NCBI GenBank assembly: GCA_001179505.1 | Contig: CDMY01000908.1 | Location: forward strand, 62,001-126,000 | Reading direction: 5' to 3' | Origin: Vitrella brassicaformis CCMP3155 | Lineage: Eukaryota; Protista; Chromerida | Length of the DNA: 64,000 nt | Shown: piece after piece, positions 5,941 through 49,923 of the stretch | Position numbering within the stretch: position 1 is the first letter of the stretch | How the letters are laid out: each line of letters starts with the position of its first letter | The notes under the pieces: model-generated | What the model was told of the DNA's origin: nothing | Seen by the model: the letters and a program-made list of their open reading frames with translations, nothing else | Database searches by the model: none | Position numbers and translations under genes: made by a program

Positions 5941-5998
5941 GGGCTTCAAACCCTGAAACCCAACCCTGGCCATGGCGAGAATCGCGCGGAACAGAGAC
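5941..5998 (+). repeat. Cassette 5' motif, copy A (GGGCTTCAAACCCTGAAACCC...GGCGAGAATCGCGCGGAACAGAGAC)
   Basis: Near-identical bipartite motif recurs at 39156-39207; both copies lie in divergent intergenic regions. Confidence 0.8.
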
Positions 5999-6150
5999 GA
6001 GCGTTCTCCGCCAGCAAAAAGAACTTCTTCCAAACTCCTGCAACCCAGCCATTTAATGAAGACACGCCTGTGCAAGAACGCCCGCACCGTACACTGCCGT
6101 CATGCTCTCCCACTACTGGACCTCCCTCTCGTTGTTCGGTCATTTTTCAG

Positions 6151-7779
6151 GCTGCCAAGCGGAGCTCATCAAGGCGCACGAGCAGAAGGGCATGAAGACA
6201 GACGTTTCGACCAACACGTCAGAGGGCAGCGGCACGTAAGTGAGACCAACCAATCGATACGCCCCACTCGTGTGGCCGTCCATACTGGCTGCATCTGGCT
6301 GTGCAGACAAACAACCCTCTGGACGACCCCGAGCTGGTGACCTTCGAGAGGTCGACAATGACCCAAATGCTGGCGAGCCCCTGCAAGGTACGGGCACTCC
6401 ACAGAGGGAATGAATCGTCCACACCTCCTTACCTGCAGGCTGGCCATGGGGTCCGGAGGAAATGCCGGTGTACCGGTTCGACATGAGCAAGCCGTGAGGG
6501 GGTGCGTACGTAGATGGACAGACGGACACACGTGAATGAATGAATGCATCATCCATTTATGTGTCGTGTGTGTATGTGTGCGGCACAGAGGTGTTGGAGG
6601 ACTTAGAGACGTGCCTGGCCAGCTGTACCACCGAGTATCAGCTGTGGCTCCTCTTCTCGAGCTGGGCCAGCTCATGAAGTATCAGATGGCCCACCTCGAG
6701 AGTTGCCGCTCTGCCAAGGTCATTCATCGAGACATCAACCTGACGAACGTCATGTTTCCGGGACGGTGGGGAGGGCGGCTGCGGGCCATGTTAATCGACA
6801 TGACGAGATCACTGCTGATCGACGTCGATAACGACCAGAAGCAGGCGAAGTACGTCGGCCGTGGGGAGAGCATGGTCAGCACATTTGCTTACGCGAGCAA
6901 ATGGAGCCTCCGCGGCTATCAGCAGGGCCCACGGTGAGCAAAGCAAGAAAGTGACACAGATGAGCCATGCACCAACAGCGCGCTTCGCCCACCGGCAGGA
7001 TGACCGAGGAGGAGATGCTCCACTTCGGAGGCGTCATCTTCATCCAACTGCTCAAGAGTGAGTAAATGTCGATTGTCATCCATGAGCCAGCAAGGGTCCA
7101 TTCATGCGTGTGTGTGCGTGTGCGTGCTTGTGTGTGCGCAGTGCTCTCCACACGTAACCCGCAATTGACGATTCGCACCCTCAGTCAATCAGCGACTCAC
7201 TCACATCACAGACAGACAGACAGACAGGCACGCATACGATCAACCGACATATGTCCCAGGGGTGTGCGTCCACTTTGTTGGTTTTGACGCAGAAAAGTCT
7301 TCATCGAGGCCGTCGTACAAGACAACCACAGCCACGAGCTGCACCTGGGGCGGGCGGACATCATGGTCGTGGGAAAACCGAACTCCAATGCCCCCCTCGA
7401 CGCCACTCTGGACGGCGGCCAGACAGGTAGGGCTGACGATTGGCTTGACAGGGAAACGGCTCAGTTAAGACAGACGAGTGGTAATGTGCGGAGGGAGAGC
7501 GTGCCGTGCCGTGCCGTGCCGTGCCGTGTGTGGTGTCCTTCTTGCTGCTGTGTTCGTGCTGCCCTGCCTTTTTAATCGCTGGCTGGAGGCCAGAGAAGGC
7601 CGCTATTTGTCTGGCGGCCAGAGATGGATACACATCACTGGTACGGCCACCCCACTCAGGCATCCATCTCCCTCCCCGTCTCTGTCTTTCAGTCGGTGTC
7701 TCGCCGATGCCCACGGAAGGCATCGCAGGATCGCTGCTTACATTTTATATTCTCAAGATTGGTTCAGTGACTCAGACAG
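6151..7779 (+). pseudogene. Degenerate protein kinase-like locus (kinase 1), probably frameshifted
   Basis: Catalytic-loop exon KVIHRDINLTNVMF...AMLIDMTRS (DFG replaced by DMT). A Gly-loop-like MGSGGNAGV and the following YRFDMSK are in different frames. No VAIK or alphaC exon seen. DLETCLASCTTEYQLWLLFSSW is out of frame with QLMKYQMAHLE. Confidence 0.6.
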
Positions 7780-25856: not shown

Positions 25857-25992
25857 CCCTGCCCTCTCCGTATCGTCTGACGTCATTGACGAGGAGGACA
25901 ACAATCAGGTCACTCTGTCTCGTTTCGAGGCCCCATGCCTTACTCCCCAACACCTCCACTGTCACCTCCATTCAGGTCTAGGCATGCTGCCG
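25857..25992 (-). pseudogene. Decayed duplicate of the nucleotidyltransferase catalytic segment (copy of 31126-31257)
   Basis: Manual alignment: about 12 mismatches in about 132 nt plus a 4-nt insertion; GST becomes GSK and DLD becomes DLI. Confidence 0.85.
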
Positions 25993-29000: not shown

Positions 29001-31360
29001 GGCTGCCCGCCATCACTGTCCTCGGCTCCCTCGTCCACGCCCACATACGGGTCAGGCGTTGTTTGCGGGGATGCTGCCGGGTGGGGATGATGGACTGTGG
29101 TGGTCATGCCGTCACGATGGGCAGGGGACGGTGACGCATGGACAGCCAGGGTGGGGGGGTTAGAGGGGGCCTGCTGCTGCTGCTGCTGCTGTCGCGGGAC
29201 TGTGACGGTGCCCGTTGTGTGCCGCAGGGAAGTGGCGGCATGGCCACCGTCCTCGTCAGAGGCACACCCACTGACGTGGTGAAAGGGGTCATGTGAAGGG
29301 GGGTGGCTGTTGGTCAGGGACATGGTGCCGTTGTCCCTCCACTCGCTCATGTACTCTGCCGCCGATGTGGGGACGTCTGTGTGGGGCGTGCTGTCGGCCG
29401 ACTCGACAAGCGTGCCTGCCTTGGCCTGCTGCAGCTGCGCACTGAGGGATGGGATGGCGTCTCTGACGGTGGCCAGGCCCTCGGTGCTGCAGTGCTTGCA
29501 GTAGGGCACCAGAGGCTGCAGGTTGCCACGGGACGCCGTCTTGACGAACGGTGCGGTGGCGTGCCAGTAGGGTGCTTGGCTGGCCAGGGCCTCGAAGGCC
29601 GCCAGCCGCCCGCCCTCCTGCTTGGACAGGCAGAAGTCATCCTCGCGGCCCTCACCACCAGGGTAGACCATGACCTCCAGCCGACACACCCACTGACACG
29701 GGCTGAACAACAACGGCACGCCGCGACCGTTGCCCAGGGCCTCGTTGCTCACGCGCACCAGCGAGAAGGCCGGCTTCCCGCCCTCATCGCCACCCGGCTG
29801 ATGAATCTCGGGGATCTCACCGAGATTGGGGGCCTTGGCAATCGAATACAGACGACCGTGGACTACAGACCTGTGGTGTGGCCGCACACACAGCAGAGCA
29901 GAGAACAGCACAGCAGAGCAGAGCGGGCAGTTTGTCAGTCAGTCAGTCGGCATCGGGTATTGAGGCTGACTACACGGGACATGGCTCAGGTCACTCACCT
30001 CACGTCGCGTCTACTGACGAAGTCCTTTGACCACCAGGTCTCCCAGTCGACGCATACCCTCTCGACACGAACAACCCTCAGATAACCTGCAGCCAGGCAG
30101 TGAGTGCAACAGGAGCCATTGCCTCCCTCCCGTCTTGGGGTGTCTGTCTGTCTGTCTGCCTGCTGTGTGTGCCGCTTGTGGCTTCAACAGTGCCTGCCTA
30201 CCTTCGGCGAGTATGACGCCGAACATGCCTGGCCAGTCTGCCGGCGGCATGTCTGCTATGACGGACGGCAGGGTGTAGAGGTCCATGCCCTCCTCCTTCA
30301 AAACCTCCGTGATGGCGCTACCGCTGCCCGCCTGACGCCCCTCGTCCAGCAGCCGGTTGACTCGGTGGATCTCCCACAGGTACACCAACCAGGTGGCCGC
30401 CGACACCCGTGCCGCCAGGTCCGCGGGTGGGTCGGCCCCTGGGATGGCCGCTGGGTCCTCGATGGTCGTGAGCTCGTCCCACACGCCGCCGTGGTTCTGT
30501 GGCGAGAGGATCCTGGCGGCCACGTCGTCGAGGTCCTTGGTGAGCTGCACGGTGCCGTGACTGCCGCTGGCCACCAATGTGGATATGGTCATGGTGAGCT
30601 GCTCCCGAGAGCCAAACCGACGGAAGCACGAGGTGAACTGTGACGCCAGGCCCTCGTGGTTGGCCGAGGTGTCACAGAAGGTGACGGCCAACAGCATCCA
30701 GCAGATGGACGGCAGCCCGCCGTCCTTCATGCCAGGCAGCCGCCGCGCCTTCATCCACTGCTTGAGCAGCCGCATCACCTGACGCAGACCCGGCCGGTGC
30801 TTCAACACGGACTGGAAAAACGCCGTGTGCCGAATGGAATTCTCCGTGTTGACCGACACGTCGCAGATGACCGACTCGGTCCGCAGCGACAGGATGGGCA
30901 CCCTTGCTGACTCGACGAACTGGCACTGGCATGTCCGCAGCAGCTCCAGGGGGTCGTACGATGACGCATGGGAGGGCGGCGTCACGCCGGTGGTCTCATC
31001 CTCACCGTGCTGGGCACTCGCCCCATCCCCCTCTTGCCGCGAGTTGCTGACCGACAGCGGCGTGGCGTCGGCCTCGGGACGGGTGCGCATCTGCTGAAGT
31101 GCCCTCGAGATGGTCTGCAGAACCACCTTGCCCTCTCCGTATCGTCTGACGTCATTGACAAGGAGGACGACGTCCAGGTCACTGTGTCTCGTTTCGACGC
31201 CCCATGCGGTGCTCCCCGACACCTCCACTGTCACCTCCAGGTCTAGGCATGCTGCCGTAAAGCGCCGCAAACAGTCCAACAGCTCCTCCTTCTTCTCTCT
31301 TTCCTCGGGAGTCGGTGTGATACACTCCAAAACATCCTGCCACGCGTAGTCGCACTCCAT
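26013..31360 (-). CDS. Non-canonical poly(A)/poly(U) polymerase-type nucleotidyltransferase (Cid1/TRF4/GLD-2 superfamily) with a very long low-complexity C-terminus
   Basis: GSTAWGVETRHSDLDVVL (GS + DxD); SARVPIL; ICDVSVN (third Asp); LLKQWMKARRL..GGLPSICWMLL; PAP-associated TTIEDP. In-frame splicing through exons at about 30100-30000, 29870-28367, 28190-28040, 27955-27254 and 27145-26013. Confidence 0.85.
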
Positions 31361-36116: not shown

Positions 36117-36181
36117 AGACTTGCATTGCATTTGAGTGTGTGTGGGTGTGTGAATGCATCAGGCAGAGAGACGTGGGGAGT
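36117..36181. repeat. 65-bp perfect direct repeat, copy 2
   Basis: Identical to 33453-33517. Confidence 0.9.
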
Positions 36182-36364: not shown

Positions 36365-39100
36365 TCACACGGGTGACAACTGATCATCGACCGACCCACA
36401 ACCATACAGGACCTCCTCGAGCGCATCAACCTGGGCCAGCCAATGCTCCCTGCCTAACGGGCTGCCACCGCCTCTGTACCCGTGGCTGCCGCTGCTGTGT
36501 GACGTCTGCCAGCGCCGTCTTGTGTGGTCCTCTGGCCGCTGGTTGGTCTGTGGGTGTGGCCCTGGGCACCCAGATGCCTGCCCGGAGGGACGCACACGGC
36601 AGCCGGCTGCCGGACGGTCCTCAACACGCTCAAGGCGGGAGGGGGAGGGGAGGGGGGCGTCAGGACGGGCCGGCTGAGCAGGGGAGATGTACTCACTCGG
36701 TGTCTGACGAGTGCACGCGGCCGTCTCGTCGGTGTCGCCGCTGTCATGTTGGCGGTGGTGCTGGTGATGGTCCTCCGGTCCTGGCTGCGTGTCGCCGGAT
36801 GGTGTCGCCGGGTGCTCTTGCTGCTGCTGCTGCTGCTGCTGCTGTGGCTCGGGCAATGACGCCTCGTCGGTGGCGGTGGTGTTGGTGAGCCACGGGTGCG
36901 CCAAGGCAGCCGACGCTGCAAAGAACACGGTGTATATCACCCAGTCAACCACAGACAGACAGACAGACAGACGAGAGATACACACATGAGCGAATCGATC
37001 GATTGGTCGATGGATTGATGGATGGATGGACAGATGCTCACTCTCTCACTAACTCGCTGGCTGCCTGCCTGACTGCCTGGCTGCCTGACTGACTGACTGA
37101 CCGGATGCGGTGCGTTTGTGTTTGTCGAACGTCAGGAGGCCGCGGATGAGGTCCTTGGCGGCCTCGGGCACATTATCATAACCCTTGAACCGAACCCCCT
37201 GAACGAACGAACGGACAAACGAGTGAGCCCACACACAACAGACAAACAAGGAGTGATGGACGGATTGCTTGATGCTTTGACTCCCACCCACCCACATGCT
37301 CACCCGTCTCATTGCGTTGAGGGCATTGCGGACATTGTGAGGCCGCCGATCAACACAGAAGAAGGGCAGCCGCCCCGTCAGCAACGCATACCTGACATAC
37401 ACACACACAGGGGCTATCAACGCAGGCAATGCAGCGGAACGGAAGGGAATGTGTATGTGCGTGCGTGTGTGTGTGTTGGGGGTGTTGTGTTGTTTAAGTT
37501 ACTTACAGGCAGACGCCCATGGCCCAGAGGTCGCTGGCCGGTCCGTAGTCACACGACTCCAGCACCTCGGGCGCCTGAATGAATGAAGCAGACGCAAAGA
37601 GCCGACAAACAAATGAACCAACAAGCGAATCAGCCAACCAACAAATGTAGCCATCCATCCGTCCATCCACTGCCTGCCTGGCTGGCTGCCTTGTCTGTCT
37701 GTCTGTTCCCTCCTGCTTGCTTGCTTACTGTGTAGTTGAGGGCTCCCCAGATGTCTGTGTGTCGGCCGGTGCCCGGCAGGAGGGCCGTGTCGAAGTCGAC
37801 AAGGATGACCCGCTTGCGCTCCGTCATGATGTTACGGAGCGACACATCACAGTGAGTGATCTGCAATGCAACCAACGGGCGGGCGGCCAATCAGGCAACC
37901 ATGCAAGGCAATCAGACAGACAGACAGACAGACAGACAGGCAGGCAGGTCGCCATCCATCCATCCATCCGTCAGTCCGACAATGGTAGGTTGGCTCGTGC
38001 GTGTGTGCGTGTGTGCGTATACACATATGTACGTTGTGTGAGTGGAGTTTCTGCAGGCCCTTGAGCGCGCCTTGGGCGATGTGGCGTGCGAGGTCGTGGT
38101 TGACGGGGAGGTCGCCGAGGCCCGTCTCGCAGTGCCCCCCGCCGATGAACTCCATGAAGATGTAGAAGAACTCCTTGTCCATGCGGATCGACCTGGTCCG
38201 ACACAGAGTGCCGCGCAGGATACCCAGGTCTATCAGCCGCTGGTACTTGGACACAAACTCACACTCGCTGCACATGGACGTCTCCAACCTGGACACACAA
38301 TACACAATAAATACGTACACCAGAGACGGACTACGTACAGGGCAGGCCGCACCGCACCGCATTGCATCCATCGCATGCACACCTGCCTGCCTGCCTGCCT
38401 GCCTGCCTTGTGTGGTGCGGCGGTGCCATGCCAACCAAAATACATACACACTGGATGGATGTGGGCAGTGAGTGAGTGAGTGGGTTGACCTACCTGAAGA
38501 GGCTCCTGGGGATGGCCTTGACCGCATACGAGGGGTCCTCAATCAGCGAAAGGGACAAATGGTATACCCAACCGTTGCTGCACACACAGTGCCACACACA
38601 CACAGAGAGAGAGAGATGGCTGGGTGAGTGGGGTGGCGTGGAGTGGGTGGCGTGCAGACCGAATACGGATGCCCATATGCATATGTCTGTCTGTCTGTCT
38701 GTCTGTGTCTCTGTGAATGTATGTACCTGCCGCGTCCGGCCTCGCCGAGGACCCTGAACCGCTCAGCCGCCAGCACATGGCCAAACGAATCAAACTCCTG
38801 CACTCACCGACACACACACACACGCACGCACGCACACACACACATGCATGCAGCCCTCTCGGGTGCTGCAGCCACTGAGGGCGGGGCGCCAAGCCTCCTC
38901 TCGACTGCCTGCCTGCCTGCCTGCCTGCCTGTGTGTGTGCCTGTGCGTCTGCGTGTGCGTACTTCGAGTGTGATGGCATTGCTGATGTCCTCGGGGGCCT
39001 CGGATGCCTTGCACTCACTGCGAATTGCACGGCCGCTCAAACTACTGGCGTCCTCCGGGGCGTTGGGCGGGGCAACAGAGCCGGGTAATATGACCGGCAT
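36365..39100 (-). CDS. Ser/Thr protein kinase, divergent (kinase 3), apparently intact
   Basis: LGEAGRGS|NGWVY; YAVKAIP; alphaC SECEF; YIFMEFI; ITHCDVSLRNIM; VILVDFDTA; WGALNYT|APEV; SDLWAMGVC; AAKDLIRGLL..KRT..AALAHPW; then a Q/H/P-rich tail to the stop at 36365. Confidence 0.85.
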
Positions 39101-39155
39101 TGCTGGCGAGTGCACTACGGCCGGACGTGATTACATGCGGACGGAGGAAGGTTTG

Positions 39156-39207
39156 GGGTTTCAAACCCTGAAACCCCTACCGGCGAGAAATCGCGCGGGA
39201 CAGAGAC
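39156..39207 (+). repeat. Cassette 5' motif, copy B (GGGTTTCAAACCCTGAAACCC...GGCGAGAAATCGCGCGGGACAGAGAC)
   Basis: Homologous to 5941-5998. Confidence 0.8.
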
Positions 39208-39218
39208 TCCACGGAGAG

Positions 39219-41790
39219 ATGAATGTTTTCTATGAATGTTTTTTCCCCTATCCTCCGTCTGGAAAAGCGCACGACGCGCAAATCGATGTCTTGGACGCAC
39301 TGGGCATGACACCCCTTGCCATCACGATGGGTCATGATCAGGGCGCTCCTGAGATGGTCGATTGGCTGTGCGGGCAGCTCGGGGTAGAGGGATCAACAAG
39401 ACTATTCCGCGGCTACATTCGACGACACTCAACGGAGCTGGGGTCGCGTTATCTCAGGCGCAGAGGAGCACTGAACGCATTCAACGCCATGTCGGCTGAC
39501 CGAGGAGGCGGCCGGATACACACACGGACTCATTTGAAGCCCCTCTCTCTACCTCTCATTCCCTGTGTGTGTATGTGTGATGATCAGTTGTGGCTGGTCG
39601 AGCATCTCGAAGACAAGGGCATTCTCTCAATGGACCTTCTGGAACAGGAAGGCAGCAGCATGCGCCAGAGTTCAGCCAGCGGATCGTTGTGCTTCTTGCA
39701 GGTAATCAGTCGGGTGGGCAAGGCTTGTTGGAGGACGAGCCTCTGCAAGGTAGATACACGTACGGGCACTCAAAGGGCGATGAATCCCGTTGTGTGTATC
39801 CCCCCACACGTCTGCCAACAGGGTGGGTGGCACCGGGCAAAACCGGGTCGTGGGCAGGGTGCACCCCACGTCCACACGCACAACGCCGGGTGAACCCTTT
39901 TTGTCGTTAATGTATGTCTGATGCAGGCGGATGGTCAGGAGCCGTGACGGGCTACGGGGCCAAGGCGGCGCCCTTCTCGGCAAGTCAGGTACATAAGGTA
40001 TATGCCAGCCTCGTGCAGCCAGGCAGGCAAGATGGGAGGCAGAAATGACCTGTTGTTATCCTTCACGTGTCGTGTCGTCTGCAGTCGTGTCGGTGCAGTC
40101 GTCGTCGTCGTCGTCTGCTTATCACTACAACAACCGCCACTTCAGATCGCGCGACCTGCACCAGCGAGGTGACGTGACTGACACAGCGTCTGTCTGTGTT
40201 GCCTTTTTTCAGGCGGATCCCCACACAGCCCCCTCTTTGTGGTGCCTGAGGACCAACTGACCGATGGCAGCTCAGGACCCCCGGCAACATCGTCAGTCAG
40301 GAATGCTCCAAGGTCAGTCAGACCTATCGATACGATACATACGTGTGCACGGAAGGATTCCTGACTGTGGCCGATTGTGCGTGCCTCTCTCTTTCTCTGT
40401 CTGTCTGGCTGTCTGTCTGTCTGTCTTTTTTGTAGGTGCATCGGGAGCCACAACAGTTGCTGGTGGGACGGAGGGCGCTCAAGTGGCGAGCCTCCTGGCG
40501 AGCCTACAAGTCAACCAACACGCGGTACATATAACGGAAAAAGGAAAGGGTGCTCTGCACACCAACGAGTGCCTATATGAATCGTTTACCCGTGTGTGCC
40601 TTCAGCTCACCGACCTGTGGCGGCCTTCCGCTCACGACCAGGCAGGGGACCTCGAGGGAGTGGAGATCAACCGTGAGGCGTACTCGCACCGCATCGACAC
40701 ACTTCACACGGGTATGTAATTTGAACACGGCACAAGTCATGACGTCGGACAAACCAACGATGGGTGCTCTGCCGTGATTCAGGTGGGGGGCTGCCCATCG
40801 CCTCGGCCGTGTGTACCAGTCGCCGGGGCCTCGCCCGCAGCGCCCCACTACCCCGCCCTACCACCGGCAGGCGGCCCGCAACGCCCCCAAAATCAATGGG
40901 ACCGCATCCACGAACACACACACACAGAGACAGACAGACAGACAGAGACTCACGCACACGTGTTGCAAGGTCCAAGGGGGAACCCTTTTTGTTGGCCAAG
41001 TCCGTCATCGAGAGTCAGTAACACAAAGGGCACACGGACGCATTTGAGCCGCCTCTGTGAGAGTGTATGTGTTTGAGGGTATCTGTGTTTGTTTCTCTGG
41101 TGCATCCAGGTGAGTTGCGAGGTCACAAGGGCCACTTCGTGAAGGTGCTGTTACGATGCCGTGAGATTGACGGAGAGATCAAGGACATCAGCCGCGTGAT
41201 GGCCAGCGAGTCAATCTTCCTCCACGGCCCCTGCAAGAGTTCAGTCAGCGGATCGCCACGGCGCACATTCGTGAGCGAGCGAGCGACTACACAGGCGAAA
41301 GGCATCAAGAGAGAGATGGCGCTGTGTGTCATCCATCCATCCATCCATCATTGTTGTGTTGTGTTGCGTTTCGTGCAGGCAGTCAGTTGGTTGGCAGGGC
41401 CTTTGGGAGGACAACCCTCCGCAAGGTACGTACGTGCGTACGGGCACTGAGGGCGATGCATTGAATCCCGTTGTGTGTGTGGGGACACCCCACTGCCTGC
41501 CTGCCTGCCTGCCAACAGGGTGCATGCATACCCCCTCTCTGCAATTTTCGACAAAGCAGCTTTGTCGAGCGTCATTCTCTGCGTGGAGGTCAGAGTCAAC
41601 GCCGAGAAAAAGCCCAGAGATCTGTCTTGCGAACGAGTTGCACTGCCGACTTCACGAGTGGGCTTCATGGGCGCCTCCGAGGGCGATGGGAGCTGGGATG
41701 GGACAGACGGGGTCGGCGAGGTCGCGGGAGGGCCGCCGCACCATGATAATGGCGTGGGTGAGGGCGAGGCGTCGTTATACTACCAAATAG
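39219..41790 (+). pseudogene. Mosaic multi-exon region starting with a single ankyrin-like repeat; frame continuity not established
   Basis: AQIDVLDALGMTPLAITMGHDQGAPEMVDWL (ankyrin G-TPL pattern); many short GT-AG-bounded exons; internal duplication 39666-39826 versus 41233-41524. Confidence 0.45.
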
Positions 41791-41875
41791 AGGTGAATAT
41801 ATGCCATCCATCGGATGGATGGATTTGGGATGCATGCATTGCATCACGTGCCTTGCCTCCCAAATCCATGCGCAG

Positions 41876-44375
41876 AGTTACGAGGATTTCGACGACATGT
41901 TGGCTGGCGCGGGATTCAGATACGTCAACAATGCTGGCGAGGGCGGGTGAGCTACCGAATGAGATGAGGGGATGGATGGAGCTTCTCTCTTGCATACATT
42001 CGCGTGTGCATGTTTGCATCATTCTCGTCTCGTCTCTCTCTCTCTCTGTGTGCGTCTGTGTGTGTGCAGCAATGGCTCGGTGTTTCGCGTAGCAAATACC
42101 TGGCTGAGGAACAGGTATAGGGCGCTCAAGGCCCTCCCACGTGAGATATTCTGGTGAGTGACTCACTCGGTGTGCACACACTCACTTACGCTGTTCTCAT
42201 GTGGATGGATGACCTCTGTCTATCTCTCTCTCTCTCTGTCTGTCTATGTGTGTGTGCCATCCGTCCGTCTATTAGGTACCCCGCCTACGACAAGATCAAG
42301 ACGCTGCAGCACGTGGTCAGATGAGAGTGGAGAATCGTTTGGCTGACGTGGTCAGCCAGGTCGAGACGACTTTTGGCCTGTTCGGCAGGTTCGTGGACGT
42401 CTCTGTGACAGATGATGCCTGCATAGTCAAGAAGGTGCCGCACATAGAGGTAAGAGGCCTCACACGGGAACATGTGTACGCAGCGCTCTGTCGATCCAAT
42501 AGCTGTCGATCTGTGTGTGTGTGTGTGTGTGTGTGCAGGGCAAGATGCAGACGGCCTTTGTGCAGGCCACAGCCAAAGAGGTCCCGCCTGTGGTGTCGGA
42601 GCTGCTGGAGGCGAACAAGGACTCACTCAAGAAGATTACCCTGCACATCAACTACTGCTCACGGACATCGGATGCCGGGCCCATCGTGTTCTCCAAAGTC
42701 ACACACGTGGACGTCCGTAGCCCAGCAGGTCGTGACTACATCAGGTATATAACGAGAGGAGTCAGAGATGACGCGACCGCGCAGTCATTCTTGTCATGGG
42801 TCGACGTCTGACTGTCTGCAGTGCTCGTCGATGGATGTTCCCGGCAATCACCACACTCCGAGTCGGCTGCATCATCAGTATGGATGCCGCTTCCTTGGTG
42901 CGTCTGCTCCGCGAATCGCCCAAGATCGAGCGGCTGCAGGCCGACTGCATCGAACTCGACGATGACCAGTGGGCGAACTTCCTCGGTGCCCTCGGCCGCT
43001 GCCCCAACCTCACCCACGTCGCCGGCATCGAAATCAACATCCGCTGCCAGTTCGAACGTCTCTATCAGCTTAGGGGCACCCTCAGCCAACACTGGAGCAG
43101 AGCGGACGAGAAAGGTACGGGACGCCAGGGCGGTGAGTGATTTGCATCTCTCTGTCTTACCTGTTGCGTGTGGCGGACGGACTACACATATTCAACTACC
43201 CGACCTCGGGATGCGCGGGAGTTTGTGTAGGACCAAGTCGATCTCCATGGACGACGGCCACTTCTACATAGTCATGGAGTGGCTGGGCGAGGGCAACTCT
43301 GAGGCCGCCATGGGCCCCCTGCCCGTGGACAACGACACGGCACGCCACACCGCCCAACAGGCCCTCAAAGGCCTCCGGACCCTACACACACACAACGTAC
43401 GCACACACACACAGACAGACACACAGACAGACACACAGACAGACAGACCTACGCAGATCCATGTCAGTAGGTATCTTCCTTATCATATCATCGTGGCCCT
43501 CTGTCTGCCTGCCTGCCTGCCTGCCTGCAGGTGACGCACTGTGACGTGTCCCTCCGCAATCTGATGCCGCAGCGATCTCGCGCCGTGTTGGTCGACTTCG
43601 ACACGGCCCTGGTCCCGGGCCTGGACAGACACACAAACGTCTGGGGCACTCTCAACTATACGGTCAGTCAGTCAGTCAATCAGTCAGTCAGTTAGAGCGG
43701 AGGCTGTGGATTGCATATGTGTGTGTGTGTGTGTGCTTCAGGCGCCGGAAGTGTTTGAGTCGTGTGACTACGGGCCTGCCAGCGACCTATGGGCAATGGG
43801 CGTGTGCATGTAAGTGACCTGCACACCACGCCACACACACACACACACACACACGCGCACATGCACGCACATGCATGGGTGTGTGGTGTGTGGTGTGTGT
43901 GCGTCAGCTTCGAGCTGGTTACGGGCCGGATGCCCTTCTTTTGCCTGGATCGGCGGCCGCAGAGCGTCCGGAATGCACTCAAAGCCATGCGACGGGTGCG
44001 TGGGTGGGGGGAGGGCGAAAGGGCTGACTGACTGACAAGGGTCCCTACACACAGGCCAGGCCCTTCCTTGCAAATGAATCAATCGGGGAATGTATCTATC
44101 GTCTGTATGGCTTTCTTCGTGTGGGTGCCGTGCCGTGCCGTGTGCGTCTGTTTTTTGCTGCACAGGGGGTCCGGTTCACTGCGAGCGATGGCGTGCCCGA
44201 CGCCGCACAGGATCTCATTCGCGGCCTCTTGACATACGACAAACACAGGCGGATCCAATCAGGTAGGTCACATTAACATTAATGTGGGTCCGTCCATACG
44301 TATGCACACACATGGACGGATGGATGGATGGATGTGTGTGTGTGTGTGTGTGTGTCAGGTGGCGGCGGTTTGTGA
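41876..44375 (+). pseudogene. Paralog of kinase 3 (kinase 4), split by an inserted foreign segment
   Basis: N-lobe exons SYEDFDDML...AGEGG|NGSVFRV...YRALKALPREIFW (41876-41946, 42070-42153). C-lobe from 43193: QLPDLGMRGSLCRTKSI..., VTHCDVSLRN, DFDTA, APEV, SDLWAMGVC. Same intron positions as kinase 3; no ALAHPW end. Confidence 0.8.
42276..43140 (+). pseudogene. Fragment of the F-box/LRR-like lineage-specific family embedded in kinase 4
   Basis: DYIS|ARRWMFPAITTLRV...LVRLLRESPKIERL...DDQWANFLGAL..LTHVAGI...LYQLRGTL parallels DRGWKMPAL...LGRFIRSSSSLKEV...GEWATLFEHF..LRTIGGI...VRRLQDVL of the 3065-5612 gene. Apparent 1-nt frameshift near 42320. Confidence 0.65.
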
Positions 44376-44843
44376 TCGTTGCCTACATTCTATATTTTGA
44401 AGAAAGTGAGTGCCCGTATAAACATGTCTCCATGGACTCTGATCGATATTTCATTGAGATTGCTTTCAGTCACTCAGACAGCAAACCCTCACAGATAGAT
44501 TGAATGTACATTGATTCGAGTCATTGATTCGTGTTACGACCCAGTCGCGGGGGGCGTGTCTCCCGCGCCTCCATGCCAAATCGCCTCTTCAGATCGCTAG
44601 CTGGCGGGAACAATGGTGCATTTGATGACGTCGTTCTATTCAAGTGCCGGCGGTGTTGGGTATGGGTGAGACATGCCCTTCTGGATGTCCGCGGACACAC
44701 GACTAGTTAGACACGTCAATAAAGTCCCATCAACTGCATGCCTTCTGTGTCTCGTAAGTGCGGCAAAAGATGGTTCAGAGACAAAACGACACGTGCCCCA
44801 TCCCAGACCTCATTCGCCAACACAACAGCCAACCTATCCCTCT

Positions 44844-47800
44844 TCACGCATCATCTGCCGGTCTTGTCGCGGCATCGGGTGTGGGCTTGGCCAAGGGCAG
44901 GGAGGGGAAAGGCGAGGGGCCTGCGATGCTGTTGCGTGGCAGCTGTGCCATGGGCGATGGGCTCAGTGAGCTGTTGCCGGCGTTGTGTGGGCTGGAGGAA
45001 CTGCTGTATGAAGAAGGCGCGCGGGGGACCTTCCTGCGCACACACACAGACATCGCATGCAGGAACATTTGCCTGTGTGTTCATCATTCGTGTCGGTCTG
45101 TGATGGCATACTTGGCTCTGCCGTGGGGCTCGTTCCGAACAGCCTCGTTCTCACACTTGAGCTGCCGAGAGCATGGCTGTGTCCATGGCTCCCCGTGTGC
45201 ATCCGCCCGCTCACCTGCAGTGATCTGAGTCCGAGGTCGTAGAAGGCCGACACCATGACCTGCTTCTCGCGAAGCTGGCTCGTCAGCTGCTCCTCACTGG
45301 TCGATCGATCGACCGTCCATCCACACACACACACGCACACACACACAGGTGAATGAATGAATGACATCAATTGTCTTTGGCGTACCGGTCCTGTTTGTAG
45401 AACTCGACCTGCTTCTCTCTCAGCTGCACCTGCTCCCTCAAGGTCTCCACCACCTGACACAGATAGGCATGCGGACGAAATAGGTAATGCGGGCATTGGG
45501 GTCTGAGTGTGTGTGTGGTTGGTACGAACTTGGTGGTATTCCTTTTCGAGTTGGCCTCTGAGGTCATCTTCATGTACCTTGGACGCCCTGCGCTCACCCT
45601 CCAGCTGACCTTCCAAGGCCTGGATGGATGGATGGTCGTCACACACACGAACAGCTGTACCGGCCACAGGTATACACGCACCTTGAGCTGTGAGTTGAGT
45701 GCGTCGATTTTGCTCTGTAGTATGAGCTCGTCCTTCTCCTTCTGCACCTGCAGCAGCTTCACCGTCTCATTCGCCGTCGCGTCGCCGCGAGCTGACGACT
45801 CCAACAAGGCGTCCTTCTCGGACTGCATCGACAGCACCCACAATAAATGGATAGTACAAACGTGCGATCCGTTGTCGGGCAGGCACCTTTAATCGCTTCA
45901 TCTCCTCGCTCTGCACAGCTATCTGGTTCTGGAGAGTCACAATCTGAGACGAAGACGGCACAGAAAGGAGGGCATGACACGTTTATCTTGCTGGTGTCTC
46001 CCTTGGTGCCTGTGTTTGTGTCTCGAGGGACTTCTCTTTGGCCTCCATCAGCTTCTGGTGCAGCTCGTCCTTGCTCTGTACGTCGAAAGCGCATCCAGCC
46101 ATAGACACACACATGGACATCGCTCGGTTCGTGCATGTGCGGATGCATACCGAGTAGAGGAGTTTCATCTGCTGCTGCTCGGCGTCAAAGCGCTCCTTGA
46201 GCGACCGGTGCTCAGACTCAACACCCTGTGAGAAACGAGCAGTATTTTTGTCCGTGGTCACCCATTCCTGCGTACCCTTAGTCGTTCATTTTCCTTCTCA
46301 AGGTCGTTCATCTGGCTCAGCAGCAAACCGCTCTGGGTCGCCTCAGTGCCTGACATGCCCCATAAACGCACGACACTGCGAGAGCCAGAGACGACTGCAA
46401 GACGTGTGTGTCTGTGCGATGGTTGGTTGGCCTGCTGACCGTGAATGTCGAGCAGCTGTGCCTCTAGTGTCTGCACCTGCCGCTGCAGCATCTGTGTGCG
46501 GGCCGTGGCCGCCTGGTAGTTCTTCTCGTACCGATCCTTCAGACGCAACGCATCATCCAAATCGTTCTCAAGCTGCATGAGCCATCCAACCAACAAACAC
46601 ACACACTGAATGTGGGCTGCGAGCCTGGTTGCATAGCTTCCTGTCTGGCTTGCTGGCTGACCTTGGTGAGCCTGTCAGCGAGGTCCTCGTTGCCGACGGA
46701 TTCCTTGAGTGCGGTGTTTTCCTTTTCGAGTTTGGCTATCCGCTGCTGCAACTCAACCACCTCCATTGTCGAAGCTGCCGAAGGACCTGTGCAAAGGCAT
46801 GCAGATATCAGTCAGCAACCACCACTATAGGATGACAGAATGCGCACACAAAGGTCGGTCTGTCTGTCTGCCTACTTGCATCGCTAGTGGCGCCCAGCGG
46901 TGAGTTGGCCAGCTCTGTCTGGAGGGCCAGCTGAGCCGTCACATTCTGCAGCTCAGTGTCCTTGTTCTTCCTGCACACACACACATACGCACATGCATGA
47001 GACACAGCACCAAAAGCTGCCTAAATCCCTGCCTCCCAGGCTCCCTCACCAATCGCGGTCCATGTCCTTGATCTGCTGTTTGAGCGAGTCGTTTTCGGCC
47101 TTGCACTCGACGAGCTCGATGCGGCCGGCGGACAGATCGCTCTCCTGGTCGGCACACTTGTCCTTGTACTGCTCCAGGGTCTTCTTGAGGGCAGCCATGG
47201 TGCGCAACTCCTTGTCCTTCTCCTCCAACTGCTCACTCAGCTCCTGCAGAGGAGCAGACAATAGGGCAGAACAGATATGCGAGAGTGCACACACCGAGCT
47301 GAATTTGATACCTACACACCTGAGTCTGTGCCTCTAGCTCCCGATTGCGCCTCTTTTCTTCCCCCAGCTCCTCCATTTTGCCCTGGTGAATGGATGGACA
47401 CATGTACATGGTGTTTGTGTCTACACATGTATCCATTCTTACCTTGTATCTCTGTATCTGTGCCTGCAGCACTTGCGCCTGCGACGCCTGGGCCTTCAAG
47501 ACGTCCACCTCATCAGCCATGCTGTCAGGAAGAGAGACACGTGAAACGACATCGATGCACTTCACACGTGTGTGGTGATTCAGGAAAGGAGTGTGTGTAC
47601 GTTTGCATCTCCTCTTTGTGTTTCTGCTCGGCTTCCCTCTGCTGCCTCCGAAGCGACTGCTCAGAAGCAGACAGGGGAGGGTGAGACACGCATAACACAT
47701 GCATTCGTGGGCTCTGGTCGTTTTGTCAGACTGACCTCGATTGTCTCCTCCAGCTCATGGATGGTGCTCTCGAGCGCCTGACGCTGTTCTGACACCTCCT

Positions 47801-48867
47801 TCTGCACACACACGCAACAAGGTCACCCTGATGAGACGACATCCGCCGAAGACATACCTGCATCTCAGACTTGGAAGCATGGACAAAGTCCTCGGACGAC
47901 TTCCGTCTCTGCCACTCCTCCTCGAGCATCTTCGTAAGCGACTGGTTCTTCTGCATGAGGCCGTCCTTCTCGCTCTCCATCTCACGAAACTTGTCCCACA
48001 AACCGTCGTAACGTGACTTGAGCTGATCGTAGTCCCTCTGCAGATCCTTCAGCAACTTTACCTGAACCCCACACACACATAGAGAGAATGGGATACCAAA
48101 GTGCTCACACTGTGTCTGCTGTGCTGACGTGGTGCACGCCTTGGCTGGTGGCCAAGAGACCATACGGGGAACCGTCTTTGGATGAAGGTGTCATGATTGT
48201 GTGTGCCCGCCCTCTCTGTGGCGCCCCCGCGCCCCTCTCCATGGCCCGCTGAATGATGGTCTGCATGGCCAGCTGAGTCGGCTGAGACAGACCCATGATG
48301 CGATTGATGAAGGCGTCCTTGCGATCACAACCTGACACAGTCAGATAAGAAAGATCTCCATTCATCCATTCCACTCATGTGCTCTGCCGTCTCTGTCTCT
48401 CCTTCCGTCTCTCATGTGGGCGTGGTGCCTGACTGACCTAGCATGACGGCCACAATGATCTCTAGGACTGTAAGAACCTCACCGAAATACCCCGCAGCCA
48501 CCTGATCCACAGACACGGTGGGCATCTCCCACCGCCCCAGCTTCAGCGAGAAATCCCTCAAGACAGCCTCCACCTTGGCCACGCCGTCCCTCTTTTGGCT
48601 CTCACCCACCAGCTTGTCCCGGGGCGTCATCAGCCGCTGGCCGAGGCTCCCCCGTCGCTCGAACATCTTCATGGCTTGGCACAGGTCCTGGAACTCCCCC
48701 GGGTCAATCTCGCCCAGCATCTTGGCGAACACCTGCCCGTCGCTGAAGTCCTCGACCGACACCACGGGGCTGCTGGCCGCAAAGTCAAAAGAATTCACCC
48801 ACTCGATGAGCAGATGGGGCTCCTCGGAAGCAACCATTTCAGAGTCAGAAGAAACACCTTCGTCCAT
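44844..48867 (-). CDS. HOOK-family microtubule/dynein adaptor (HOOK N-terminal domain plus long coiled coil)
   Basis: LIEWVNSF...VEDFSDGQVFAKMLGEIDP; LEIIVAVML|GCDRKDAFINRIMGLSQPTQLAMQTIIQ; heptad-rich exons; C-terminal REKQVMVSAFYDLG signature. Confidence 0.85.
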
Positions 48868-48979
48868 GGAGACAAGACGGTGTCAGCGGCCTCCGAATCT
48901 CCTCAAAGAATGCCAGAGTTTCGAGAGGCCAGCAAAAATGCGAGCTTAGCTTACCAAGCTCGCATTTCTCAGATTGTGA

Positions 48980-49923
<944 letters not shown>

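What the first reader, a model, noticed from the sequence alone, without database searches (positions are those of the whole stretch)
39156..44481. Candidate gene-fragment-capturing cassette: conserved shell, variable cargo
Copy B has the same 5' motif, EPLQ|GW junction and 3' motif as copy A (5941-7779) but is 5.3 kb instead of 1.8 kb. It carries an ankyrin-like repeat, unassigned exons, a duplicated junction module, a kinase-3 paralog and an F-box/LRR-family fragment. Conserved ends with unrelated intron-bearing cargo is the pattern of Pack-MULEs and Helitrons in plants; I know of no such system described in chromerids. If general, it could explain the large chimeric kinase, ankyrin and F-box-like families of this lineage. 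I found no transposase, terminal inverted repeat or clear TSD. A GC hairpin (CGCGGGG...TCCCGCG, 44526-44547) and a CTAG at 44577 are only weakly Helitron-like. A plastic gene family with conserved UTRs remains the alternative.
Basis: partly seen in the sequence, partly recalled or inferred. Interest (0 to 1): 0.8.

Follow-up and report, generated by a model that had tools for sequence, protein, structure and literature searches.

The report
Mosaic kinase genes sharing regulatory ends
Two divergent kinase genes of the alga Vitrella share short non-coding start and end modules, but these look like gene-control signals found elsewhere in the genome, not the ends of a gene-capturing transposon; the end module holds an undescribed 28-letter motif present about 300 times.

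Summary
Copy A (5941-7779) and copy B (39156-44481) share a 5' block, an exon-intron junction and a 3' module, in that order, around kinases of different subfamilies.

The transposon reading does not hold.
- The core of the 5' block is a telomere-like palindrome found at 58 sites, beside unrelated DNA and near a candidate promoter word.
- The 3' block is a 28-nt motif with 294 exact-core copies. It lies at exon starts, in head-to-tail arrays, with kinase exons upstream. It is never seen paired with the 5' block.
- I found no terminal inverted repeats, no shared second terminus, no MULE transposase, and no Helitron-type 3' end common to A and B.

B is a local mosaic:
- its junction module is duplicated;
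- its kinase is a paralogue of the adjacent minus-strand kinase (37094-38660);
- an internal fragment of a lineage-specific LRR-like family (42345-43137) splits that kinase.

The function of the 28-nt motif is unresolved and is the part most worth following up. The genome matches Vitrella brassicaformis CCMP3155 exactly in size and scaffold count. Other first-stage notes covered this same stretch and copy A; I found no note on the 28-nt motif itself.

The parts
5941..5998 (+). Copy A 5' block. It has a telomere-like palindromic core (GGGCTTCAAACCCTGAAACCC) and a 37-nt extension shared only with B. It is non-coding: B has an indel that breaks A's ATG frame.
   Evidence: The AGCTCGC promoter word lies 127-142 nt upstream.
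6378..6440 (+). Copy A junction: exon end ...CCCCTGCAAG followed by an intron that starts GTACGGGCACTC.
   Evidence: The pattern is exact in the genome only here.
6536..6934 (+). Copy A kinase catalytic-loop exon (open frame containing VIHRDINLTN). It is of the C360/C176 subfamily.
   Evidence: Weak Pkinase, Pkinase_fungal and Kdo hits. It is 57-81% aa identical to L062, upstream of that locus's 28-nt motif.
7730..7779 (+). Copy A 3' module: the 28-nt motif (7730-7758) plus a tail (7763-7779) shared only with B.
37094..38660 (-). K-minus: an intact-looking kinase gene lying head-to-head with B. It is the closest paralogue of B's kinase exons. It has no LRR insert, no 5' block and no 28-nt motif.
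   Evidence: tblastn gives 39-69% aa identity exon by exon. blastn gives 65-74% nt identity, introns included. The sequence was read.
39156..39207 (+). Copy B 5' block. It sits in the ~200-nt gap between B and the inferred start of K-minus, so it is probably part of a shared divergent promoter.
39327..39702 (+). B exons 1-2 as used by the public gene model P0001 (residues 1-93). No family could be assigned.
39664..39816 (+). Junction module, copy B1 (...CCTCTGCAAG|GTAGATACACGTACGGGCACTC...).
41233..41497 (+). Junction module, copy B2: an internal duplicate of B1 (91% over 23 nt, then 73% over 138 columns), with about 108 extra nt between the two pieces. The public model uses it as a splice junction.
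41876..42151 (+). B kinase N-lobe exons (glycine loop and VAIK-like strand), of the K-minus type.
   Evidence: 39% aa identity to 38657-38496.
42345..43137 (+). Internal fragment, in three exon-like pieces, of a lineage-specific LRR-like family. It lies between the kinase N-lobe and C-lobe exons. It lacks the family's N-terminal part and its conserved C-terminal end.
   Evidence: (23 relatives among 1.84 billion representatives).
43212..44270 (+). B kinase C-lobe exons (hinge, HCD loop, DFD, APE, subdomain XI), of the K-minus type. The inferred stop codon TGA at 44373-44375 overlaps the first base of the 28-nt motif.
   Evidence: The splice phase is inferred by analogy with K-minus.
44375..44481 (+). 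Copy B 3' module: the 28-nt motif (44375-44403, one core mismatch), a ~53-nt stretch absent from A, then the tail shared with A (44457-44481).
44526..44580 (+). It does not hold up as a Helitron 3' end: the hairpin-to-CTAG spacing is 30 nt, the next base is C rather than T, and copy A has no counterpart.
44850..48882 (-). Convergent Hook-like coiled-coil gene. Its 5' end is supported by a Pfam hit; its 3' limit is inferred. It leaves less than about 0.5 kb after B's motif, so no plus-strand gene fits downstream of it.
   Evidence: HOOK_N at 48415-48882, minus-strand frames, AGCTCGC words at 48940-49170.

Best explanation
A and B are two paralogous members of a lineage-specific, locally duplicating gene family of Vitrella brassicaformis. 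What they share is not a transposon shell. It is the family's non-coding control modules and one N-terminal exon-intron junction.

The 5' block lies in a gene-start region. Its core is a telomere-repeat-like palindrome (GGGTTTSAAACCC followed by AAACCC units) that recurs at other gene starts. In B it sits in the short gap between two head-to-head genes.

The 3' block is a 28-nt nucleotide-level motif, ATCGyTGyCTACATTTTATATTyTGAnG. It lies at the very start of a short last exon, at or just after the stop codon. About 300 genes carry it, many of them divergent kinases in head-to-tail arrays. I infer that it acts in the RNA, in 3'-end formation or in post-transcriptional control of this gene set.

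B became 5.3 kb through ordinary DNA-level rearrangement within the neighbourhood:
- a duplicate of its own junction module;
- a copy of the adjacent minus-strand kinase;
- an internal piece of an LRR-like family gene, now lying between that kinase's N-lobe and C-lobe exons.

The result is probably a decaying or chimeric gene.

Shown: the homologies, the copy numbers, the lack of pairing of the ends, the motif's position next to splice acceptors and downstream of kinase exons.

Inferred: the promoter role, the RNA-level role, the order of the rearrangements, and whether B still codes for a protein.
For: Organism: the genome is 72,700,666 bases in 1064 contigs. That equals the Vitrella CCMP3155 assembly, which holds only 1.5 Mb of transposable elements (PMC4501334).

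5' core:
- 22 near-exact copies against 0 in the control, with unrelated flanks.
- The palindrome occurs at 58 sites against 0.
- The candidate promoter word AGCTCGC is about 5 times denser within 200 nt of it.
- The extension is found only in A and B.

28-nt motif:
- 294 exact core copies against 0, and 195 looser matches against 3.
- Conservation is confined to about 35 nt in 38 non-redundant instances.
- No reading frame is consistently open.
- An acceptor-like YAG after a pyrimidine tract lies within 20 nt upstream in 24 of 38 instances, against 15% at random positions (p about 1e-11).
- Pkinase matches 6 of 141 same-strand frames upstream but 1 of 147 downstream.
- By my tally of the listed positions, 35 of 35 neighbouring copies less than 10 kb apart share a strand.
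- In B the kinase frame stops at the motif's first base, and a convergent Hook-like gene follows.

Pairing of the ends: no 5' core lies within 1.5 kb of 28 other motif loci, and no motif near 20 other 5' loci.

Mosaic nature of B.
Against: - No transcript data could be used, so exon ends, poly(A) sites and the transcription start are inferred.
- The public gene model (P0001) joins B differently and stops inside the LRR-like fragment.
- In tandem arrays the motif is also only 20-70 nt upstream of an ATG of the next unit. A 5'-leader role cannot be excluded there.
- It is odd for paralogues that short non-coding modules are better kept than the coding sequence. It is also odd that kinase relationships disagree with flank relationships. 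Both need recombination or strong selection, and I did not demonstrate either.
- The genome does hold Helitron Rep-like genes.
Confidence: 0.68

Rival explanations
1. A and B are non-autonomous copies of a gene-fragment-capturing transposon (Helitron-like or Pack-MULE-like), and the conserved 5' and 3' motifs are its termini.
For: A and B have conserved ends in the same order around different kinases and gene fragments. The genome has about 9 loci with Helitron_like_N matches, one in an 804-aa open frame. B has a GC hairpin and a CTAG downstream.
Against: - The extended ends exist only in A and B.
- The generic cores are not paired elsewhere.
- There are no terminal inverted repeats and no MULE transposase.
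- A has no hairpin plus CTRR. B's hairpin is 30 nt from the CTAG, and the next base is C.
- For the six Helitron Rep contigs covered by the listed part of the motif table, the nearest 28-nt motif is 11 kb away, on the 5' side of the Rep match. For the contigs that also carry a 5'-motif hit, that hit is more than 100 kb from the Rep match.
- B's kinase copy is homologous to the adjacent gene through its introns, which points to a local DNA duplication.
Confidence: 0.06
2. The 28-nt '3' motif' belongs to whatever lies downstream of it, not to the kinase gene upstream. It would be either a 5' leader, such as a relic of a spliced leader copied into the genome with retroposed mRNAs as in dinoflagellates, or the 5' terminus (A|TC...) of short non-autonomous Helitron-like units.
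For: - The block has sharp edges and is about 28 nt long, preceded by an invariant A then TC.
- An acceptor-like AG lies just upstream.
- An ATG follows 20-70 nt downstream in many copies.
- Copies lie head-to-tail, down to 153-570 nt apart.
- From memory, and not tested here, it loosely resembles the dinoflagellate/perkinsid spliced leader.
Against: - In B no plus-strand gene fits downstream.
- The motif is not near the promoter word.
- Kinase exons lie upstream, not downstream.
- No second shared terminus appears within 1.5 kb.
- Nothing downstream is conserved as a spliced-leader RNA intron or Sm site would be.
- The papers searched report no spliced leader for Vitrella.
Confidence: 0.13
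3. The 28-nt motif is conserved because it encodes a shared C-terminal peptide ([HDNY]-R-C-L-H-F-I-F, then stop) added to many proteins by a short last exon, for instance as a sorting or docking signal.
For: In that frame the variable motif positions are synonymous (CGy Arg, TGy Cys, yTA Leu, TTy Phe). A stop codon follows at once in 20 of 38 instances.
Against: - 18 of 38 instances have no stop there, and 2 have an internal stop.
- Bases after the 'stop' are conserved (G at +19 in 36 of 38; TT at +24/25).
- The codons CAT, TTT and ATA never vary synonymously.
- In A, B and the C176 array the frame inferred from the upstream exon is a different one.
Confidence: 0.08
4. Region B is an assembly artefact: a chimeric join of reads from several paralogous loci in a short-read assembly.
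For: The assembly is short-read, built from 4177 contigs. B mixes pieces of three families and is rich in microsatellites.
Against: The 39-45 kb region I read has no N runs. Homology to K-minus is collinear through exons and introns. The public model spans most of B.
Confidence: 0.05

Closest known systems
Pack-MULEs and gene-capturing Helitrons of plants
   Same: Conserved short ends around unrelated, intron-bearing gene fragments. The genome holds Helitron Rep-like genes.
   Different: There are no terminal inverted repeats, no target-site duplication, no MULE transposase and no hairpin plus CTRR end shared by the two copies. The full ends occur only twice, and their generic cores occur independently of each other across the genome.
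Tandemly and locally duplicated multigene families that evolve by segmental duplication, gene conversion and exon shuffling (for example, lineage-specific kinase expansions in alveolates)
   Same: Head-to-tail arrays; a paralogue next door (K-minus); collinear exon-intron homology; chimeric and truncated members; gene relationships that disagree with flank relationships.
   Different: Here the short non-coding modules, above all a 28-nt block, are far better conserved than the coding sequence. The 28-nt block is shared by kinase subfamilies that are only about 30% identical.
Telo-box-type promoter elements (telomere-repeat-like AAACCCTA motifs near the starts of plant genes; from my own knowledge)
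   Same: Interstitial telomere-repeat-like units (AAACCCT/AAACCC) in gene-start regions, close to another candidate core-promoter word.
   Different: This one is arranged as a palindrome (GGGTTTSAAACCC). It occurs at only about 58 sites. A promoter function is inferred from position alone.
Relict spliced leaders in dinoflagellate genes (from my own knowledge)
   Same: A short block with sharp edges after an AG acceptor, repeated at many genes in same-strand arrays.
   Different: No spliced-leader RNA gene, no evidence from mRNA 5' ends, no conserved intron or Sm site. In B the block lies at the 3' end of a gene with no gene downstream.

Membership tests
Helitron (non-autonomous, gene-capturing) | 5' TC and 3' CTRR termini, with a GC-rich hairpin about 10-12 nt before the 3' end, shared among copies | tested here: not met
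   A has no hairpin or CTRR after 7779. B's hairpin ends 30 nt before the CTAG, and the next base is C. A and B show no similarity downstream of the tail. No shared second terminus was found in 25 motif loci.
Helitron (non-autonomous, gene-capturing) | An autonomous Rep/Hel partner carrying the same ends | tested here: inconclusive
   Rep-like matches occur at about 9 loci. For the six Rep contigs within the listed part of the motif table, the nearest 28-nt motif is 11 kb away. For the contigs that also have a 5'-motif hit, that hit is more than 100 kb away.
Helitron / Pack-MULE | Many copies bounded by the same pair of ends | tested here: not met
   The extended 5' block, the junction and the 3' tail occur only in A and B. 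The generic cores do not co-occur.
Pack-MULE | Long terminal inverted repeats and a 9-10 bp target-site duplication | tested here: not met
   The only inverted repeats around A and B are microsatellite-like. No flanking direct repeat was seen on reading the sequence.
Pack-MULE | A MULE/MuDR transposase in the genome | tested here: not met
   PF10551 has no match in the whole assembly. The tool's own caveat applies: a blank first look does not prove absence.
Protein kinase (Pkinase, PF00069) | Catalytic loop, DFG-type and APE-type motifs; score above the Pfam cut-off | tested here: inconclusive
   Searched exon by exon, the hits fall below the cut-off. For B, Pkinase gives E 0.002-0.01 over profile positions 60-119 and 164-186. 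For A, Pkinase_fungal gives E 2e-4. The motifs are visible in translation: HRD/HCD, DFD, APE. The joined, spliced protein was not searched.
LRR / F-box-LRR proteins | Significant match to LRR or F-box models | tested here: inconclusive
   The fragment and its close relatives P0002-P0004 and P0009-P0015 have no Pfam hit. Weak hints appear in P0005 (LRR_At5g56370, E 0.0085) and P0016 (F-box, E 0.0015). Clear LRRs appear only in the distant P0021.
Ankyrin repeat | Match to an ankyrin-repeat model | tested here: not met
   No Pfam family at E<=0.1 for 39000-39890.
Spliced-leader relic | A spliced-leader RNA gene (leader exon, GT donor, Sm site) and the leader on mRNA 5' ends | not testable with these tools
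   No transcript data were available. Nothing downstream of the block is conserved, and Rfam finds nothing.

The most novel reading that the evidence does not exclude
The 28-nt block ATCGyTGyCTACATTTTATATTyTGAnG is an undescribed, lineage-specific RNA signal carried on a portable short last exon. About 300 Vitrella genes would share it, including kinase subfamilies that are otherwise nearly unrelated. It would mark them for a common fate, such as 3'-end formation, translational control, localisation or small-RNA targeting. It would spread or be maintained by recombination among arrayed genes.
Probability: 0.35. Interest if true: 0.6.

Novelty: new variant of a known kind. Interest (0 to 1): 0.4.

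Why it matters
For the question asked, there is no evidence that chromerids have a Pack-MULE-like or Helitron-like gene-capture system. The chimeric kinase/LRR architecture seen here is better explained by local duplication and insertion among family members.

Three things are of wider use:
- A 28-nt motif with about 300 copies, sitting at the start of last exons, has not to my knowledge been described, and the papers searched do not mention it. It could define a co-regulated gene set in a close free-living relative of apicomplexan parasites.
- A telomere-like palindrome appears to be a second gene-start motif in this genome.
- The public gene model for B seems to fuse unrelated pieces and to leave the kinase C-lobe exons out. 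This bears on counts of 'chimeric' kinase, ankyrin and F-box-like families in this lineage.

Tried and rejected
- **Coding explanation for the 28-nt motif.** Three frames were compared with random positions and none is preferentially open. The RCLHFIF-stop frame is attractive but inconsistent.
- **RNA hairpin across the motif.** No register pairs consistently, and single-sequence folds differ from copy to copy.
- **Known RNA families.** None in the window, and none at the motif in four loci.
- **A partner terminus.** No 11-12-mer is shared by 5 or more loci within 1.5 kb on either side.
- **Amino-acid composition as a coding detector.** It scored antisense frames as high as real exons, so I dropped it in favour of Pfam counts.
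- **Whole-genome Pkinase scan** to cross-reference with motif positions. It lists only canonical kinases, and these divergent ones are missed.
- **Gene annotation around B** through the look-up of encoding contigs. Nothing is on record for this genome.
- **Fetching the large motif arrays.** I did not try to get those letters another way.
- **Metagenome scan for the 22-mer.** No hits; records of this genome may be left out of that collection.
- **Literature.** No paper holds the motif in any relevant context. None reports a spliced leader or Helitrons in Vitrella.
- **Spliced models.** All protein searches were made exon by exon, by reference. I left out the step of joining exons into a spliced protein and searching that.
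- **Human DNA.** No contig looked human.

Full report
**Organism.** The window is contig C908:62001-126000 of an assembly of 72,700,666 bases in 1064 contigs. These are exactly the figures published for Vitrella brassicaformis CCMP3155, whose genome holds only about 1.5 Mb of transposable elements (PMC4501334).

**The observation.** Every shared piece is present. The 17-mer core of the 5' motif, its 18-mer extension and the 17-mer 3' tail each occur exactly twice in the window, at A and B. Shuffled sequence gives 0.01-0.05.
- blastn aligns 5941-5998 with 39156-39207 at 78%.
- The exon end plus intron start (CTGCAAG then GTACGGGCACT) is at 6378-6398, 39740-39770 and again at 41416-41448.
- The 3' module aligns at 7730-7758 with 44375-44403, and at 7763-7779 with 44465-44481.
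- Between these blocks the nucleotide sequence shares only microsatellites. At protein level the only match is a 31% stretch across the kinase catalytic loop.

**Are the ends a pair? The 5' side.** The 5' core has 22 copies with at most one mismatch, against 0 for the reversed control. Their flanks are unrelated. Most show GGGTTT-S-AAACCC followed by more AAACCC(T) units. The palindrome alone is at 58 sites against 0. I tested it and found it about five times denser within 200 nt of the 5' core than elsewhere in the same loci, lying within 50 nt in six of the 20 loci outside A and B. So the core looks like a gene-start motif. The 18-mer extension occurs only in A and B.

**Are the ends a pair? 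The 3' side.** The 3' tail and the junction are at chance level apart from A and B. The first part of the 3' module is a different matter. It has 195 matches with at most three mismatches against 3 for the control. Its 14-mer core has 294 exact copies against 0. None of the 28 other 3'-motif loci has a 5' core within 1.5 kb, and none of the 20 other 5' loci has the 3' motif. For six 5' loci on contigs where the 3' list is complete, none has a 3' motif within 10 kb. The 'shell' is therefore two independent genome-wide signals, plus extensions private to A and B.

**The 28-nt motif: what it is not.**
- In 38 non-redundant instances, conservation is confined to ATCGyTGyCTACATTTTATATTyTGAnG and a few bases beyond. 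Both flanks are random.
- No reading frame is preferentially open.
- One frame reads [HDNY]RCLHFIF with a stop in 20 of 38, and its variable positions are synonymous. But bases after that stop are also conserved, and three codons never vary. I treat the motif as a nucleotide-level signal.
- It forms no common hairpin.
- It matches no Rfam family.
- It has no partner terminus within 1.5 kb.
- It is not near the promoter word.

**The 28-nt motif: what it is.**
- An acceptor-like YAG after a pyrimidine tract lies within 20 nt upstream in 24 of 38 instances, against 15% of random positions (p about 1e-11). The motif therefore sits at the start of an exon.
- Scanning all same-strand open frames of 70 or more residues, Pkinase is the only recurrent family. 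It matches 6 of 141 frames upstream and 1 of 147 downstream. The single downstream hit belongs to the next unit of an array.
- By my count of the listed positions, all 35 neighbouring copies less than 10 kb apart are on the same strand.
- In the C176 array a 66-nt GT..AG intron joins an acidic exon to the motif exon.
- In B, taking the same splice phase as the paralogue K-minus, the kinase frame ends at TGA 44373-44375. The last base of that stop codon is the first base of the motif.
- B's downstream neighbour is a convergent Hook-like gene: HOOK_N at 48415-48882 on the minus strand, promoter words at 48.9-49.2 kb, and coiled-coil frames down to about 44.9 kb. No plus-strand gene fits after the motif.

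I conclude that the motif marks the start of a short last exon or 3' UTR. In tight arrays an ATG of the next unit follows within 20-70 nt, so a leader role cannot be ruled out there.

**The cargo.**
- A's catalytic exon is 57-81% identical to a kinase exon in L062 (contig C360). That exon lies about 1 kb upstream of L062's own 28-nt motif and belongs with the C176 array.
- B's kinase exons are instead 39-69% identical, exon by exon, to a minus-strand gene at 37094-38660, head-to-head with B. At nucleotide level the match is 65-74% and runs through introns. This is a local DNA duplication.
- That neighbour, K-minus, has its N-lobe and hinge exons about 200 nt apart. It has no LRR insert, no 5' block and no 28-nt motif.
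- In B the corresponding exons are about 1 kb apart. The gap holds 42345-43137, which a search of 1.84 billion representative proteins places in a small family of 23 hits.
- The best hit, P0001, is the public 615-aa model of B itself. It maps to 39327-43137 and ends by reading on past an alternative GT donor (after 43117) to a stop at 43138-43140. That leaves the kinase C-lobe exons out of this model.
- The other family members align only by an internal ~200-residue region. They end in a conserved C-terminal domain that B lacks. They have no Pfam domain beyond faint LRR or F-box hints. So this piece is a true internal gene fragment.
- B also holds an internal duplicate of its junction module: 39664-39816 against 41233-41497.
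- The 'ankyrin-like' exon has no Pfam support.

**Transposon tests.**
- No terminal inverted repeats other than microsatellites.
- No MULE transposase in the genome.
- Helitron Rep-like matches do exist at about nine loci. For the six Rep contigs within the listed part of the motif table, the nearest 28-nt motif is 11 kb away; for the contigs with a 5'-motif hit, that hit is more than 100 kb away.
- A and B share no hairpin plus CTRR end.

**Reading.** A and B are paralogues that keep the family's promoter-proximal block, one N-terminal junction and the 3' module. Their kinase parts have different histories. B has been enlarged by duplication and insertion of neighbouring and family DNA. Three things remain unexplained:
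- why 28 nt are held almost invariant across about 300 loci whose coding sequences have diverged beyond recognition;
- why kinase relationships and flank relationships disagree;
- whether B is expressed as one chimeric protein.

**Limits.**
I did not seek those letters by another route.
- No transcript or annotation data for this genome could be reached.
- All protein searches were exon by exon, by reference. The joined spliced models were not built or searched.
- Splice sites, the promoter role and the 3'-end role are inferences from sequence.

Noticed in passing
G000 genome-wide; in the window at 7730-7758 and 44375-44403: The 28-nt motif ATCGyTGyCTACATTTTATATTyTGAnG has 294 exact copies of its 14-nt core (147 per strand, control 0). 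The copies sit at exon starts, and many are in same-strand arrays (contigs C113, C176, C283, C288 and others). I found it neither in Rfam nor in the papers searched.
   Followed up: partly
G000 genome-wide; in the window at 5941-5961 and 39156-39176: The telomere-repeat-like palindrome GGGTTTSAAACCC occurs at 58 sites (control 0), often followed by further AAACCC(T) units and close to the candidate promoter word AGCTCGC. It may be a second gene-start motif of this genome.
   Followed up: partly
G000:C366:90944-91594 and about 8 other loci (C200, C571, C227, C326, C219, C347, C239, C314): Helitron_like_N (PF14214) matches, the best at E 1.4e-51 inside an 804-aa open frame. Helitron-type Rep genes therefore exist in this genome. 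Their termini were not read.
   Followed up: no
window:39327-43137: The public 615-aa gene model (P0001) uses several frames that look non-coding (rich in Arg, Cys and Trp). It skips the EPLQ|GW junction of copy B1 and ends by reading on past an alternative GT donor (after 43117) to a stop at 43138-43140. The kinase C-lobe exons at 43212-44270 are left out of this model. It is probably a mis-joined or pseudogene model.
   Followed up: partly
window:44406-44419: The ~53-nt stretch that B's 3' module has and A lacks begins with GTGAGTGCCCGTAT. That is the reverse complement of the conserved intron start (GTACGGGCACTCAC-like) seen at the three junction copies.
   Followed up: no
window:33453-33517 and 36117-36181: A 65-nt direct repeat, 100% identical, with copies 2664 nt apart, just upstream of the K-minus kinase region. 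A further 114-nt repeat at 89% identity lies at 25857-25970 and 31126-31239.
   Followed up: no
window:11743-12267 (minus strand): An exon of an RNB-domain (RNase II/R-type) exoribonuclease gene (Pfam RNB, E 5e-12), on the strand opposite to copy A.
   Followed up: no
L055 (G000:C288:64192-67211) and L045 (G000:C176:7878-10897): Some arrayed units look truncated. In L055 a kinase catalytic-loop exon is followed within about 250 nt by the 28-nt motif, with no C-lobe exons in between. This suggests partial duplicates that keep the motif.
   Followed up: no
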